Assembly (NCBI RefSeq): GCF_006345805.1
Contig: NC_043004.1
Span: 55,428,001-55,492,000 of the forward strand
Length of the DNA stretch: 64,000 bases
Reading direction: 5' to 3'
From: Octopus sinensis
Taxonomy: Eukaryota
Positions within the stretch are counted from its first letter, which is position 1; each line of letters opens with the position of its first letter. The notes beneath the pieces were generated by a model that was not told where the DNA came from, made no database searches, and was given only the letters and a program-made list of their open reading frames with translations. The position numbers and the translations under genes are program-made. Below, in pieces: positions 17,246-46,601 of the stretch.

Positions 17246-17720
17246 ATGAAGGAAGCAACTGTTCTGTTACATATTGTCACATTGATGGCATGTCTGTATA
17301 TCAACGCTAGCACTTTCGTCGTCAACAACAACGACAACAACAGCAAAAGCAGCAACGATAACAACATTAATTACGATGTCAACAACGACACCAAAATAGG
17401 GACGTCAGAATCTTCAGTTGTTTCATCCAAGCCCTGTACCCTGAATTCGTCGCATTGTAGAAGCGGTGAAACGTGTGTAATATATAACCGCAGTTTACAG
17501 TGCCGTAAGTTAACTGCCAGAGAACAGTACTTTTGTTACCGATGTAAGAACAGCTTATGTGACTTTGACGGGGACGGATATATGACATGTCACTGCAAAC
17601 CACAATGGACAGGAGAACACTGCACTAAGCCATGCTTGAGGAATTGCACAGGAGACAAAGAATATTGCGAATGCCCCGACAATTTTACGCCTACATCGAA
17701 CAGCACAAAACAATTCAACG
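17246..17720 (+). CDS. EGF-TM-TIR receptor, coding exon 1 (signal peptide, Asn/Asp-rich linker, Cys-rich EGF-like modules)
   Basis: MKEATVLLHIVTLMACLYINAS is signal-peptide-like. CYRCKNSLCDFDGDGYMTCHCKPQWTGEHC is a 6-Cys EGF pattern with a typical CxxxWxGxxC end. The exon ends aacG|GTGAGT (donor 17721, phase 1); 475 nt = 158 codons + 1. Confidence 0.9.
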
Positions 17721-18211
17721 GTGAGTCATTTTTTTTCATATTTACAGCGATTGTTAGCACGTGTGTGTGCGTGTGCGCACGCGGGTATGTATGTATATAT
17801 GTATGTATGTATGTATGCATGTATGTATGTATGTATGTATGTATGTATGTATGTATGTATGTATGTATCAAAACAATTTGATTCAATTTCCGTGCTACTT
17901 AAATTTCAAAGCCCCTGACGGGACTTATTAGTTGTTGAATGAAAATATATATATTTGTTTGTTTGTTTGTGTGTGTGAAAGTGTGTGTCTCTCTCTCCCT
18001 ATCTCTCTCTCTCTTTCTCTCTCTCTCTCTCTCTCTCTCTCTCTCTCTCTTTCGCTTTCGTTCTTTACATGTGTATGTCTCTGAGTGTGTGTATGTATAT
18101 GCGGGAGCAGAATAAAACAGGAGAGTTTACTTAAGTGTTTTTATTACAGCAACGTGTATTACCTAATTTTACACGTATGTCCCTAGCGAACACCAGAACG
18201 TTGTACAATAA

Positions 18212-18529
18212 TCCAGACCGGGCGTTGTGAGTGTTTATTGAACGAAAACACCTAAAGCTTCACGAGGCTCCGGCAGGGATGGTGGTGATCCCTGCTGTAC
18301 TCTTTCACCACAACTTTCTCTCACTCTTACTTCCTGTTTCTGTTGTACCTGTATTTCAAAAGGCCGGCCTTGTCACTCTCTGTGTCACGCTGAATATCCC
18401 CGAGAACTACGTTAAGGGTACACGTGTCTGTGGAGTGCTCAGCCACTTACACGTTAATTTCACGAGAAGGCTTTTCCGTTGATCGGATCAACCGGAACCC
18501 TCGTCGTCGTAACCCACGGAGTGCTTCCA
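18212..18529 (+). mobile_element. SINE family A, 5'-truncated copy in intron 1
   Basis: Matches 28460-28783; flanked by acgttgtacaataa / acgttgtacgataa (probable TSD). Confidence 0.85.
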
Positions 18530-19261
18530 CGTTGTACGATAAACCAACAGAAGAGTATAGTTATTCAATTCGACACTACATACCAAATTAGATTAGTTGA
18601 TAGAGCAAGGAAACAAATGTGTGTAAACTGAAGAGAAAATTCTTTTTATATCAATTCAGTAAAGGAGGGTGGGGTAGTACTTTTGTGTTATCAGTGAAAT
18701 TAAGAGAAAACAAGTAAGAGGGTAATAATAAAGCCCTGTGTCTAAGAGCAAAGGAGGTTCAAATTAAGGTCATAATTGCAAAACAAAAAAAAAATAATAA
18801 TAAATCTCTACGGATAAATGGCTTAGAACAGAGTGTGGTGTGGACAGTATATTAGTTAGGAAAAGGCAGTCAGATATATACGCTGTTAAATTAGCCATGT
18901 GTGTACATTTATTTATTTACTTACACATACACACACACGCAGTACACAGACACCATATTTATAAGAACATGTGTTCGTAGATAACAATTGAGGGTAAAAT
19001 TAATTAATTAATCAATTTCACCAAGTGTTCAGTATGTAAAAGGACCATTTAAGGCGAATTCAAAATATTACATTATATAATTAGGGCTTAGTAAAATAAA
19101 TTACTTTGCCACATACTGAACTTAGTAGAAATAGCAGCCAAAAAAATTTTTTCTTAGCATTTCTACTACTTAAAGAAAATTTCTCTCAGATAATGTTTAC
19201 TCCAGACAGCTCACGAAGGTTTGGGGGTAAATACAGAAAAATATCACAAGTACATAGATCG

Positions 19262-19324
19262 TTTGAGTACGTCAACGTTTCAAGATTAGCCAAATAAAAT
19301 CAGCATTTCTTTCGTCAGCTCAAA
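19262..19324 (-). ncRNA. Type I hammerhead ribozyme (minus-strand copy)
   Basis: Exact reverse complement of the motif at 19896-19958. Confidence 0.82.
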
Positions 19325-19895
19325 ATTTCTTAATTTGGATTTGGAAACACTAAAAAGAAGGAACTTTACCTATCAGCGAACTTGTCGCTTCAGATGAACC
19401 ACTCCAACTAAACAGTGTCAACAAATTCAAAATGCGCAGGCGTAAAATTCTGCACTCCCCATTCCACCCACGTGGTCTATCTAGCAAACATTATATTTTA
19501 ACCGCGAGAACCGAGGCAGTATGACCGAGAGAAATGAATTATAATATCAACAATTGAGGGTAAAATTAATTAATTAATCAATTTCACCAAGTGTTCAGTA
19601 TGTAAAAGGACCATTTAAGGCGAATTCAAAATATTACATTATATAATTAGGGCTTAGTAAAATAAATTACTTTGCCACATACTGAACTTAGTAGAAATAG
19701 CAGCCTCGGTTCTCGCGGTTAAAATATAATGTTTGCTAGATAGACCACGTGGGTGGAATGGGGAGTGCAGAATTTTACGCCTGCGCATTTTGAAGTTGTT
19801 GACACTGTTTAGTTGGAGTGGTTCATCTGAAGCGACAAGTTCGCTGATAGGTAAAGTTCCTTCTTTTTAGTGTTTCCAAATCCAAATTAAGAAAT

Positions 19896-44427: not shown

Positions 44428-44571
44428 AGGAGAAATTATACGACGTATTCATTTCGTATAAATCTTCAGATACAGACGAATCTTGGGTGAAAAACATTCT
44501 GTTTCCGAAAATCGAAGATGACATGGGGCTGAAAGCATGTATTCACTTTCGGGACTTCGTCCCGGGTGAGA
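44428..44571 (+). CDS. EGF-TM-TIR receptor, exon 3 (TIR box 1 to BB loop)
   Basis: Acceptor ttgttttccattttcAG (44426-44427) and donor gagA|GTAAGT (44572); 144 nt, phase 1-1. It reads (E)EKLYDVFISYKSSDTDESWVKNILFPKIEDDMGLKACIHFRDFVPGE, with TIR box 1 (YDVFISY) and box 2 (CIHFRDFVPG). Confidence 0.93.
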
Positions 44572-45589
44572 GTAAGTATCGATCTGTCTTCATTGTTCTT
44601 CGACTTTCGAATAATGTTGGTCTAGTGTGAGTGGAATATACCAGTTTAGAGATACCATTGATGATCAAATTTTACGATTTTTGTGTGTGTGTGTGTGTGT
44701 GTGTGTGTGGTGTGTGTGTGTGTGTGTGTGTGTGTGTGTGTGTGCGCGCGCGCGTGTGTGTGTGTGTGTTGTAAATTAGAGGGGATCGGGTACGTCAAAA
44801 TAAATTTGGTGACATATCACCTGAAAATATTCAGAGGTGTATCACCTGAAGAAATTACAATTTGAGAAAATAAGAATTTGCAGAATGTTACATATTGAAA
44901 GCATATAAAATGTTGTTTAAAACTATAAAGCCAAAGCACTCTCAATTTTTTTCTGGAGGAAAATACTATCCAAATTCTTGAAACTCGCATCTAGATAGGT
45001 AATGAAATAGAAGGCATTGCAATATTCAAATTTATTGAAACTCAAAAACAAATAAGATAATAATTGAAAATGAAATATATATAGAGAGAGAGTCAGAAAC
45101 CCCTGTTCAAAATTATAACGCCAGGTTGAATAATGTTCTCACGGAATATATCAGCAATAGAGTGTTTAACCACCACCTTTCTGAACTGCTTCAAAAACAC
45201 GCGATTTCATACTCCCAATTAGCTTCTGCAGCGGGTCAAGTGGAAGCTCTTACCAAGCCTCCTTTATTCCCGTTTCAAGTTCATCAAAAGATGAATAGTG
45301 CTTGCCTTCGCTGTACACAACTTTCGTGAGATATCCCCAGGATTAAGGTGGGGCTTCTTGCTGGCCATGGTATTACTTCAACCCCGATTGCAAGGAGGAA
45401 ATCCGAAGTTGCTCTTGCTTTATGAATAGGAGCGTTGTCCTATAGAAATATGAAGTTCTCGCTACAGAGCCTCCCTTCTTCGTCATTATGAGCCCTACCA
45501 AACATATCGATGCTGCAACTGCCTGACGTCTACCTTTTAAAAAGTCATGCACTTAGTCTCCTAGTTATTCTGCAATACCAATGTATAAA

Positions 45590-45880
45590 ATGCATGATCA
45601 ACTTTGTCAAAGGCCTTGGTAAAGTCGAGATATATCAAGTCCACATTTGAGTGGTTCGGCTACTGTTTCAGTACCCAGCCATAATGCTGTAGTGGCTGTA
45701 GAGACAGCTCCTTCCTGGACGGAAACCATGTTGTGGGATTGTGAGCAAGTTATTTTCTTCCAGGAACGTGATCGACCACCTTCTGACAATGCGTTCTATG
45801 GCCTTGCTAACACGTGAAGTCAGAAAGCCTCTAATTTTAGCATCTGCTCTGTTTCTTCCTTCCATACAAAACTGAACGTA
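45590..45880 (-). mobile_element. CR1-group LINE RT fragment (relative of 1501-4789)
   Basis: Minus strand reads SKAIERIVRR...FLEENNLL...QHGFRPGRSC...YLDFTKAFDKVDH. Confidence 0.8.
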
Positions 45881-46269
45881 ATGAGAAGTAGCTGAAATGG
45901 AAAGCAAGTATATAGTGTATGTGTTTGATTGGCAAAACTATGACTATCCTCTAATAAAACTATATCTATCCATCCATCCATCTATCTATCTATCTATCTA
46001 TCTATCTATCTATCTATCTATCTATCTATCTATCTATCTATCTCTCTCTCTCTCTTTCTCTCTCTCTCTCTCCCTCTCTCTCTCTCTATATATATATATA
46101 TGTATGTATGTATGTATGTATGTATGTATGTATGTATGTATGTATGTATGTATGTATATATATATATATATATATATATATATATATATATATAATATAT
46201 ATATATATATATATATATATATATGTGAGTGTGAATATTTTAATCAATGATTTTCTTGTATATTTACAG

Positions 46270-46601
46270 CTATTTCAAACAATATCATAGAATGCATACA
46301 AAACAGCAGAAGAACGCTTCTGGTGCTAACCAATGATTATATAGACAGCGAGTGGACCCGGATGGAATACCAAGTAGCCCAACAGGAAATGTTAAAACTT
46401 CGTCACAGAATTATTCCTGTTATTCTCGGTAATTTCAAGGATTTAGACATCAAAGATAAAAATCTAAAATATATTCTGGAAACAGTGACCTACCTAAAAT
46501 GGCCAACAGACCCAGGCAGCACACATCTTCAAACTGCATTCTGGAACAATCTACAGAAGACTTTACGAAAGAAATGCCAATCAAAGCTAGTTTCTGTCTA
46601 A
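46270..46601 (+). CDS. EGF-TM-TIR receptor, terminal coding exon (TIR C-terminal half, stop)
   Basis: Acceptor ttcttgtatatttacAG (46268-46269). It reads (T)[52 protein letters not shown]...YLKWP...[10 protein letters not shown]...SV*, with the SRRTLLVL strand, the SEW..E helix and the box-3 FW. In frame with ORF 46323-46601. Confidence 0.93.

What the first reader, a model, noticed from the sequence alone, without database searches (positions are those of the whole stretch)
17246..46601. Complete EGF-transmembrane-TIR receptor gene hidden across 29 kb of repeats
Seen: four exons with canonical AG/GT boundaries and matching phases splice into one open 1125-nt frame (374 aa). It encodes a signal peptide, an Asn/Asp-rich linker with many N-x-S/T sequons, a 4-Cys module, one canonical 6-Cys EGF, a shortened second EGF, a Thr/Ser stalk, a TM helix with RRFR, and a full TIR ([34 protein letters not shown]). 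Established: Toll-like receptors use LRR ectodomains and IL-1 receptors use Ig domains; the BB-loop Pro-Gly recruits TIR adaptors such as MyD88. Inference: a non-canonical Toll/IL-1R-type receptor that senses a ligand through EGF modules. I recall EGF-TIR architectures being listed in bivalve TIR-protein surveys without functional work, so the architecture may not be wholly new. I know of no ligand, pathway or cephalopod characterisation.
Basis: partly seen in the sequence, partly recalled or inferred. Interest (0 to 1): 0.85.

Follow-up and report, generated by a model that had tools for sequence, protein, structure and literature searches.

The report
Octopus EGF–transmembrane–TIR receptor gene
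The window holds an apparently intact four-exon octopus gene for a membrane protein with EGF-like modules outside the cell and a Toll-type TIR signalling domain inside; it belongs to a family already catalogued in molluscs, whose function nobody has tested.

Summary
Exons 17246-17720, 27363-27536, 44428-44571 and 46270-46601 (+) have AG/GT borders, all in phase 1. They splice to 1125 nt, giving 374 aa. Pfam finds a TIR domain (E 3.6e-22), and the nearest solved structures are TLR1/2/6/10/15 TIR domains. The ectodomain has EGF-type cysteine spacing and an EGF-like predicted fold. A hydrophobic stretch at about aa 176-197 is followed by RRFR.

The same four-exon layout occurs in the colinear O. 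vulgaris locus and in an O. sinensis paralogue. An uninterrupted transcript contig encodes a 441-aa EGF-TM-TIR homologue.

The architecture is not new. "EGF-TIR" is a named class in oyster and Aplysia immune-gene surveys, and relatives occur across gastropods, bivalves, octopods and an annelid. This gene belongs to a fast-evolving, Asn-rich octopod branch. Its TIR is constrained (omega 0.33); its stalk/TM exon is not.

Caveats:
- The membrane-proximal EGF has lost two family-conserved cysteines.
- A fifth, cassette exon (25962-26087) is possible.
- A broken second copy of promoter plus exon 1 lies at 56733-57460.
- There are no transcript data for this gene.
- Ligand sensing and MyD88 signalling remain inference.

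Verdict: a real gene, a new member of a known kind, of moderate to low interest.

The parts
17113..17245 (+). Proximal upstream region and 5' UTR. It is duplicated together with exon 1 in the second copy.
   Evidence: It is near-identical to 56733-56855. Promoter function is inferred only.
17246..17720 (+). Exon 1 (475 nt, ends in phase 1). It encodes the start codon, the signal-peptide-like N-terminus, an Asn/Asp/Ser-rich linker, a 4-Cys module, a canonical 6-Cys EGF and a degenerate 4-Cys EGF remnant.
   Evidence: It is 75%, 68% and 62% identical to the octopus proteins P0002, P0008 and P0001. AF2 and Foldseek give an EGF-like fold. It lacks 7 aa and has Cys->Ser at aa 153 compared with relatives.
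25962..26087 (+). Candidate optional cassette exon (126 nt, phase 1-1, AG/GT). It would add 42 aa to the stalk, giving a 416-aa product.
   Evidence: It is homologous to an extra exon in the O. bimaculoides model P0002. It is in frame here. The frame is also open in O. vulgaris, with an in-frame 18-nt deletion and AG/GT kept. Its identity (87%) is barely above the flanking intron (84%), so it is unproven.
27363..27536 (+). Exon 2 (174 nt, phase 1-1). It encodes the Thr/Ser stalk, the TM helix (about aa 176-197), the RRFR stop-transfer and the juxtamembrane motif MKFAYYLQPYADK.
   Evidence: The TM exon of O. sinensis LOC115215177 is also 174 nt. The borders are identical in O. vulgaris, where the exon is 168 nt. 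Omega is 0.86, not distinguishable from neutral.
44428..44571 (+). Exon 3 (144 nt, phase 1-1). It encodes the N-terminal part of the TIR domain, with box 1 YDVFISY and the BB loop RDFVPG.
   Evidence: It is 91.8% identical in protein and DNA to O. vulgaris. The homologous exon in O. vulgaris is also 144 nt.
46270..46601 (+). Exon 4 (332 nt including the stop). It encodes the C-terminal part of the TIR domain ([19 protein letters not shown] box) and a short tail.
   Evidence: It is 87-88% identical to O. sinensis and O. vulgaris. TIR exons 3+4 give omega 0.33, P = 0.002 against neutrality.
56733..57460 (+). Second, broken copy of the upstream region plus exon 1 (ATG at 56856). It probably starts a tandem paralogue that runs off the window.
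   Evidence: There is 1 mismatch over about 490 nt, then a 101-nt insert (57222-57322), a premature stop and a frameshift. Its downstream flank is colinear with the O. bimaculoides P0008 locus.

Best explanation
This is an apparently intact gene for a type I membrane protein of the lophotrochozoan EGF-TIR family. It has four exons, possibly five. It belongs to an Asn-rich, fast-evolving branch of the family so far seen only in octopods, and that branch lies in a tandem pair.

Shown: the exon structure, the open frame, the TIR domain, the TM segment, the EGF-type modules, orthology to the O. vulgaris/O. sinensis locus, and purifying selection on the TIR.

Inferred mechanism: the glycosylated EGF-like ectodomain binds a soluble or cell-surface partner, or self-associates. 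This brings the cytoplasmic TLR1/2/6-like TIR domains together. Their intact box 1, BB loop (RDFVPG) and box 3 (FW) then nucleate a TIR adaptor of the MyD88 type, which feeds IRAK/TRAF6/NF-kB. In short, it would work like a Toll-like receptor with the LRR horseshoe replaced by a short EGF stalk.
For: - Splice model: an open 1125-nt frame with AG/GT borders and matching phases.
- TIR: Pfam E 3.6e-22, and the nearest solved structures are signalling TLR TIR domains. Boxes 1-3 and the BB-loop Pro-Gly are present.
- Family: full-length EGF-TM-TIR homologues occur in octopods, gastropods, bivalves and the annelid Owenia, at E down to 1e-123. There are 31 invariant columns, all in the TIR region.
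- Transcript support for the architecture: Logan contig L004 (2455 nt) carries an uninterrupted 441-aa homologue.
- Gene structure: the same four-exon layout, including a 174-nt TM exon, occurs in O. sinensis LOC115215177. The O. vulgaris locus is colinear and has identical exon borders.
- Join of ectodomain and TIR: the O. sinensis RefSeq model P0001 joins an exon-1-type ectodomain to TIR exons, and its last TIR exon is 100% identical to the O. vulgaris one.
- Selection: omega is 0.33 for the TIR (P 0.002) and 0.38 for exon 1 (P 0.0006).
- No rival ectodomain: no LRR or Ig domain was found in the protein or in the long + strand open frames upstream or in the introns.
- Pathway: MyD88, IRAK and TRAF6 transcripts exist in O. 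vulgaris haemocytes (PMC4199593).
Against: - There is no transcript or protein evidence for this particular gene. No near-identical protein is in the 5.8-billion-protein collection, and the exon-1 ORF is not on record.
- The membrane-proximal EGF has lost its third and sixth cysteines, which are nearly invariant in the family. That module is predicted with low confidence.
- Several near-invariant family residues differ here. The juxtamembrane YEDDDxK is YADKEEK, and the Pro of LSPxY is Asn.
- The stalk/TM exon evolves at a neutral rate.
- Public models of the orthologues disagree with each other. One is ectodomain plus TM only, one is TM plus TIR only, and one skips the TM exon.
- No EGF-TIR protein in any species has a known ligand, adaptor or phenotype in the papers found.
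Confidence: 0.55

Rival explanations
1. The gene is real, but the protein is a modulator rather than a primary sensor. It would be a co-receptor, or a SIGIRR-like negative regulator, whose TIR titrates adaptors or receptor TIRs and whose short ectodomain has no ligand of its own.
For: The ectodomain is short, about 150 aa, and a third of it is a low-complexity Asn-rich linker. SIGIRR and IL-1RAcP TIR domains are among the PDB matches, at E 1e-10 to 7e-13. The ectodomain evolves fast and one EGF is degenerate. Isoform models that skip the TM exon exist for relatives.
Against: The BB-loop Pro-Gly and boxes 1-3 are intact, and the best matches are signalling TLR1/2/6/10/15 TIR domains, with E-values ten orders of magnitude better than SIGIRR. 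Exon 1 as a whole is under purifying selection (omega 0.38).
Confidence: 0.22
2. The gene is decaying or silent: a recently inactivated member of a tandem array that still has an open frame by luck.
For: Two family-conserved cysteines have been lost from one EGF. The neighbouring copy of exon 1 is plainly dead, with a stop, a frameshift and a 101-nt insert. The stalk/TM exon is neutral, with omega 0.86. Intron 2 has swollen tenfold with repeats compared with O. vulgaris. There is no transcript evidence.
Against: All four exons are open, all six splice sites are canonical, and the start and stop are conserved. The TIR shows significant constraint against O. vulgaris (P 0.002). The 21-nt deletion is in frame and leaves an even number of cysteines.
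Confidence: 0.13
3. The family serves cell-cell recognition or development rather than immunity, as Toll does in Drosophila. The EGF modules would engage a host membrane or matrix partner.
For: The closest fold matches of the ectodomain are Notch EGF arrays and EGF-family ligands. The family core (two membrane-proximal EGFs, juxtamembrane region, TIR) is conserved from annelid to octopus, more like a housekeeping signalling module than a pathogen sensor.
Against: The Foldseek E-values are weak, and EGF folds are generic. This octopod branch is tandemly duplicated and fast-evolving in its ectodomain, which is a pattern more usual for immune receptors.
Confidence: 0.08
4. The four-exon join is wrong. 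Exon 1 and the TIR exons would belong to different transcripts.
For: Public octopus models split the locus: P0002 is ectodomain plus TM, and P0005 is TM plus TIR.
Against: The two split models overlap on the TM exon, so together they span the whole gene. The phases match. The paralogue has the identical layout. The O. sinensis orthologue model joins ectodomain and TIR. A cDNA-like contig shows the joined architecture.
Confidence: 0.02

Closest known systems
Molluscan 'EGF-TIR' proteins, catalogued in Crassostrea gigas (PMC4346834) and Aplysia californica (PMC9334734: LOC101855416, LOC101856027), and represented here by Lottia, Patella, Batillaria, Mytilus, Pecten, Mercenaria, Saccostrea and Owenia proteins
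   Same: They share the signal peptide, EGF-like modules, single TM, a conserved juxtamembrane stretch and a TIR domain. Identity is 31-41% over the full length. Box 1, RDF.PG, SRRT, EW.R.EYQ and FW are all shared.
   Different: This protein has a shorter ectodomain with an Asn-rich linker. Its membrane-proximal EGF lacks two conserved cysteines. The acidic juxtamembrane run YEDDD is degenerate (YADKEE). Most bivalve members also carry long C-terminal tails that are absent here.
Octopod conserved paralogue LOC115215177 (O. sinensis P0010, O. bimaculoides P0029 'slit homolog 1 isoform X3', Argonauta hians P0007)
   Same: It has the identical four-exon layout, including a 174-nt TM exon, and a similar overall size of 406-410 aa against 374 aa.
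   Different: Identity is only 37% and 35% (P0007 and P0010). The paralogue has more complete EGF modules and no Asn-rich linker. Its BB loop reads RDFLVG or RDFVVG (Pro replaced by Val), whereas this gene keeps RDFVPG.
Orthologous octopus models: O. sinensis P0001 ('probable serine/threonine-protein kinase DDB_G0272254 isoform X2'), O. vulgaris P0005, O. bimaculoides P0002
   Same: The O. vulgaris locus is colinear with the window. The TIR is about 90% identical, exon 1 is 62-75% identical, and the N-terminus MKEA.VL is shared.
   Different: Each public model is partial or skips the TM exon, and P0001 has a long extra N-terminal repeat region. Those relatives that carry an ectodomain keep the full 6-Cys membrane-proximal EGF. 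Intron 2 is 1.65 kb in O. vulgaris against 16.9 kb here.
Vertebrate TLR1/2/6/10/15 (TIR domain only)
   Same: These are the best solved-structure matches, at E 1e-22 to 3e-17 over the whole TIR. The BB-loop Pro-Gly and the FW box are shared.
   Different: This protein has no leucine-rich repeats. Its ectodomain is EGF-like and about 150 aa, against roughly 550-800 aa of LRR (my own knowledge), so it is not a TLR by definition.
SIGIRR / IL-1 receptor family
   Same: Both are single-pass membrane proteins with a short ectodomain and a cytoplasmic TIR. PDB matches have E 1e-10 to 7e-13.
   Different: The ectodomain here is EGF-like, not immunoglobulin. The TIR is clearly closer to TLR-type TIR domains.

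Membership tests
Lophotrochozoan EGF-TIR family | Cytoplasmic TIR domain above the Pfam threshold | tested here: met
   PF01582 scores 79.5 bits against a cut-off of 21.3, E 3.6e-22. PF13676 scores 62.5 bits against 28.
Lophotrochozoan EGF-TIR family | EGF-like cysteine-rich modules in the ectodomain | tested here: met
   Canonical 6-Cys spacing at aa 97-126. The invariant family cysteines C115, C117, C126, C130, C134, C141 and C143 are present. The AF2 model is confident there and its Foldseek matches are all EGF. The Pfam EGF hit on this protein alone is sub-threshold (E 0.012). The last module lacks 2 of its 6 cysteines.
Lophotrochozoan EGF-TIR family | Single TM helix between the EGF modules and the TIR, with an N-terminal signal peptide (type I topology) | tested here: met
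   There is one internal hydrophobic peak (KD19 2.44, aa 178-196) followed by RRFR, and a hydrophobic N-terminus. No dedicated SignalP or TMHMM tool was available.
Lophotrochozoan EGF-TIR family | Full-length homology to family members, including the juxtamembrane motif W+R..... MK..(H/Y)YFQ.YEDDD.K | tested here: inconclusive
   Full-length hits reach E 1e-45 to 1e-123, and MKFAYYLQPY is kept. The near-invariant E214, D215 and D217 are replaced, giving YADKEEK.
Lophotrochozoan EGF-TIR family | Shared exon layout in cephalopods (ectodomain exon / TM exon / two TIR exons, all phase 1) | tested here: met
   O. sinensis LOC115215177 shows tblastn hits at 3001-3552, 6305-6478, 11436-11582 and 27561-27947. 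The O. vulgaris exon borders are identical.
Toll-like receptors | Leucine-rich-repeat ectodomain | tested here: not met
   There is no LRR hit in the protein at E <= 1, and none in the long + strand open frames upstream or in the introns.
Toll-like receptors | TLR-type TIR with box 1, BB-loop Pro and box 3 | tested here: met
   YDVFISY, RDFVPG and FW are present. The best PDB matches are TLR TIR domains.
IL-1 receptor family | Immunoglobulin-domain ectodomain | tested here: not met
   There is no Ig hit. The ectodomain is EGF-like.
MyD88-dependent signalling receptors (functional class) | Physical recruitment of MyD88 or another TIR adaptor, and NF-kB/Rel activation | not testable with these tools
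   The only support is inference from TIR similarity and from the presence of MyD88, IRAK and TRAF6 in octopus haemocytes (PMC4199593).
Enzymatic TIR (SARM1 / bacterial / plant NADase type) | NAD+-cleaving active site and activity | not tested
   Enzymatic TIR domains appear only as weak partial matches (AbTIR E 4e-3, RUN1 6e-3), against 1e-22 for TLR TIR domains. No active-site analysis was done.

The most novel reading that the evidence does not exclude
The Asn-rich EGF-TIR branch may be an octopod-specific set of surface receptors that turns over rapidly. Its features are tandem duplication, gene conversion between neighbours, a fast-evolving ectodomain and stalk on a conserved BB-loop-competent TIR, and optional TM-exon skipping. 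It could partly stand in for the unusually small TLR repertoire of cephalopods (PMC10279657), while the older paralogue, whose BB-loop Pro is replaced by Val, has taken a different, non-canonical signalling role.
Probability: 0.15. Interest if true: 0.55.

Novelty: new member of a known kind. Interest (0 to 1): 0.3.

Why it matters
EGF-TIR proteins are conserved from annelids to octopuses, yet in the papers I could search they appear only as a line in immune-gene inventories. No ligand, adaptor or phenotype is reported for any of them.

Cephalopods have the smallest TLR repertoires among molluscs (PMC10279657), so any extra TIR receptor class is relevant to how they sense microbes.

The practical value is a cleaner full-length model than the three fragmentary and misnamed public octopus models. 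That gives a defined construct for localisation, adaptor-binding and reporter assays.

It does not change what is known about TIR signalling.

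Tried and rejected
I predicted exon 1 alone instead.
- Looking up P0001 and the exon-1 read-through ORF on public contigs found nothing. The source species therefore stays unidentified. 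Introns are about 80-84% identical to O. vulgaris and about 77% to O. bimaculoides.
- Six-frame Pfam scanning through stop codons is not accepted. I scanned the longest stop-to-stop frames instead.
- Rfam and tRNA scans of the window found nothing, although the 385-bp repeat has a tRNA-like head by eye.
- Literature searches for 'TIR-DC' + EGF, 'ecTIR-DC' and cephalopod + EGF + TIR found no functional study. I recall Gerdol et al. 2017 (Dev Comp Immunol) as the main survey of bivalve TIR proteins, but I could not read it here, so it is a lead and not evidence.
- I considered and rejected a TLR or IL-1R with a distant LRR or Ig exon: the phases, the orthologue models and the absence of such domains argue against it.
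- I considered the cassette exon as certain and rejected that, because it is barely more conserved than the neighbouring intron.

Full report
**1. Observation**

I read the four proposed exons and their borders and spliced them in a script. The exons are 17246-17720 (475 nt), 27363-27536 (174 nt), 44428-44571 (144 nt) and 46270-46601 (332 nt). Each is bounded by AG and GT where a border is needed, and all three junctions are in phase 1. The joined sequence is 1125 nt with one terminal stop, giving 374 aa.

**2. Domains**

- TIR. Pfam gives TIR (PF01582) at E 3.6e-22 over aa 221-369 and TIR_2 at 6.9e-17. Against PDB sequences the best matches are the TIR domains of TLR15/TLR2 (1.2e-22), TLR1, TLR6 and TLR10. 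IL-1RAcP, SIGIRR and MyD88 follow far behind, and enzymatic TIR domains appear only marginally.
- TM and N-terminus. One internal hydrophobic peak (Kyte-Doolittle 2.44, aa 178-196) is followed by RRFR. The N-terminus has a signal-peptide-like core. There are nine sequons and 14 ectodomain cysteines.
- EGF. On this protein alone the only Pfam EGF hit is sub-threshold (EGF_Teneurin, 0.012). However, aa 97-126 have the canonical C-x2-C-x4-C-x9-C-x-C-x8-C spacing, and relatives carry Pfam EGF hits.
- Predicted fold. An AlphaFold2 model of the exon-1 peptide, built on a 25-row family alignment, has pLDDT 77-93 over aa 61-130. All its best PDB matches are Notch EGF arrays or EGF-family ligands. Single-EGF ligands superpose at 1.3-2.7 Å, but E-values are weak, the best being 3.8e-3.
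- Third module. The third module (aa 130-158) is predicted poorly, with pLDDT 54-65.

**3. Relatives**

The protein search returned 36 hits.

- Octopus models are the closest. They are O. sinensis P0001 (E 4e-123), O. bimaculoides P0002 and P0008, and O. vulgaris P0005.
- A second, more conserved cephalopod lineage follows. It comprises LOC115215177 in O. sinensis, its O. bimaculoides and Argonauta hians counterparts, and several transcript-like Logan contigs.
- Gastropods, many bivalves and the annelid Owenia come next.

A 25-sequence alignment shows 31 invariant columns, all in the TIR region. It also shows a strongly conserved juxtamembrane stretch and two membrane-proximal EGF modules. The Logan contig L004 (2455 nt) carries an uninterrupted 441-aa EGF-TM-TIR reading frame. 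For a relative, therefore, the joined architecture exists in a sequence without introns.

**4. Gene structure elsewhere**

- In O. sinensis LOC115215177 the protein maps to four blocks: aa 1-184, a 174-nt TM exon, a TIR block of about 144 nt and a terminal block. These are spread over 50 kb.
- The O. vulgaris locus L002 is colinear with window 23.4-46.7 kb. Its borders for the TM and both TIR exons are identical.
- The TIR of O. sinensis P0001 is 100% identical to that O. vulgaris locus over the last exon, and P0001 joins it to an exon-1-type ectodomain.
- The public models P0002 (ectodomain plus TM) and P0005 (TM plus TIR) overlap on the TM exon, so together they cover the whole gene.

The rival that the exons belong to different genes is therefore very unlikely. 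No LRR or Ig domain appears in the long open frames upstream or in the introns.

**5. Selection**

I used Nei-Gojobori estimates.

| Region | Compared with | dN | dS | omega | P (nonsynonymous deficit under neutrality) |
|---|---|---|---|---|---|
| TIR exons 3+4 | O. vulgaris | 0.051 | 0.154 | 0.33 | 0.002 |
| Exon 1 | O. bimaculoides P0008 exon | 0.15 | 0.395 | 0.38 | 0.0006 |
| Stalk/TM exon 2 | O. vulgaris | 0.298 | 0.347 | 0.86 | 0.47 (not distinguishable from neutral) |

Exon 1 protein identity to the octopus relatives is only 62-75%, against about 90% for the TIR. The picture is a conserved signalling domain on a fast-changing outside.

**6. Where this copy departs from the family**

- Compared with all relatives, the membrane-proximal EGF lacks seven residues (consensus x-G-x-C-x-x-x) and has Ser for Cys at aa 153. 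It has therefore lost its third and sixth cysteines.
- The deletion is in frame, and 14 ectodomain cysteines remain.
- Near-invariant juxtamembrane acidic residues and the Pro of LSPxY are also replaced. The Pro replacement (TNDY) is shared with the O. sinensis and O. vulgaris orthologues.
- The BB loop keeps Pro-Gly (RDFVPG), as in bivalves and gastropods. The other cephalopod lineage has Val there.

**7.

(a) A candidate cassette exon at 25962-26087. It is 126 nt, phase 1-1, with AG/GT borders.
- It is homologous to an extra exon in the O. bimaculoides model P0002.
- It is open in frame here, and also in O. vulgaris despite an 18-nt deletion.
- Including it gives a 416-aa product.
- It is only marginally better conserved than the flanking intron (87% against 84%), so I treat it as a possibility only.

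(b) A second copy of the upstream region plus exon 1 at 56733-57460.
- It has one mismatch in about 490 nt.
- It is then broken by a 101-nt insert that duplicates 57775-57875, a premature stop and a frameshift.
- It keeps the Cys codon that copy 1 has lost.
- Its downstream flank is colinear with the O. bimaculoides P0008 locus. The region is therefore a tandem pair whose 5' ends were recently homogenised or duplicated.

(c) Intron 2 is 16.9 kb here against 1.65 kb in O. vulgaris.

**8. Mechanism**

Shown: a type I membrane architecture with a TLR-type TIR.

Inferred: partner-driven or self-driven clustering through the EGF stalk brings the TIR domains together. They then recruit a MyD88-type adaptor. 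MyD88, IRAK and TRAF6 are expressed in O. vulgaris haemocytes (PMC4199593).

I put about 0.9 on 'a real gene of the EGF-TIR family' and about 0.55 on the full statement that includes activating receptor function. The main rivals are:
- a SIGIRR-like modulator or co-receptor (0.22);
- a silent or decaying copy (0.13);
- a developmental or adhesion role (0.08);
- a wrong exon join (0.02).

**9. Comparison with what is known, and novelty**

'EGF-TIR' is an explicit category in the oyster immune-gene census (PMC4346834) and in the Aplysia immunome, which lists two genes (PMC9334734). Neither paper reports function, and my searches found no functional paper.

Octopus members already exist as automated models under misleading names. 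These are 'probable serine/threonine-protein kinase DDB_G0272254', 'slit homolog 1' and 'abnormal pharyngeal pumping eat-20'.

The protein is not a TLR, because it has no LRR, and not an IL-1R, because it has no Ig domain. It is a new member of a known but uncharacterised kind.

**10. Verdict**

The architecture is not new and the function is untested. Interest: 0.3.

Noticed in passing
window 26800-27167 (+) and 28401-28785 (-); also 18213-18529 and 13221-13368; L002 10114-10497: The TM exon is flanked by inverted copies (92.5% identical) of a ~385-bp repeat with a tRNA-like head, i.e. a tRNA-derived SINE. A 96.9% identical copy lies just 3' of the TM exon in O. vulgaris, but in the opposite orientation, so it is an independent insertion. 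Inverted intronic repeats around an exon are the classic setting for exon skipping or circularisation, and models of relatives do skip this exon. The link is my inference only.
   Followed up: partly
window 56733-57460 (+): A near-identical second copy of the upstream region plus exon 1. It is disrupted by a 101-nt insert (57222-57322, 98% identical to 57775-57875), a premature stop and a 7-nt frameshifting deletion. The deletion lies at the same spot where copy 1 has its in-frame 21-nt deletion. This copy retains the Cys codon (TGC) that is AGC in copy 1.
   Followed up: yes
window 25962-26087 (+): A possible in-frame cassette exon of 42 aa. It is homologous to an exon in the O. bimaculoides model P0002 and is also open in O. 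vulgaris, but it is barely more conserved than the surrounding intron.
   Followed up: yes
P0001 (O. sinensis) and P0029 (O. bimaculoides): Annotated isoforms of the orthologue and of the paralogue skip the 174-nt TM exon. They predict a signal peptide plus EGF plus TIR protein with no membrane anchor. The same skip stays in frame here and would give 316 aa.
   Followed up: partly
family alignment; P0003, P0004, P0007, P0010, P0029: The conserved cephalopod EGF-TIR lineage has Val in place of the BB-loop Pro (RDFLVG or RDFVVG). The oyster-like members have Ile (RDFVIG). The window lineage and most molluscs keep Pro-Gly.
   Followed up: partly
window 27537-44427: Intron 2 is 16.9 kb, against 1.65 kb at the colinear O. 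vulgaris locus. The extra roughly 15 kb (about 29.1-44.3 kb) is microsatellites, such as (TAA)107 at 37960-38278, dispersed repeats and a LINE tail (zf-RVT ORF 42011-42859).
   Followed up: partly
window 1608-3793 (+); 62045-62857 (-): A LINE element with endonuclease and reverse-transcriptase ORFs lies upstream of the gene. A mariner-type DDE transposase ORF lies near the window end.
   Followed up: partly
window 19065-19517 and 19703-20155: A 453-bp inverted repeat, 98.9% identical, with a spacer of about 185 bp, in intron 1. It looks like a foldback or hairpin element.
   Followed up: no
window 57630-57652: A short interstitial telomere-like run (CTAACC)n, just downstream of the broken exon-1 copy.
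   Followed up: no
window 44340-44411; L002 about 11700-11715: A (TAC)n microsatellite abuts the polypyrimidine tract of the exon-3 acceptor. It is present at the same place in O. vulgaris.
   Followed up: no
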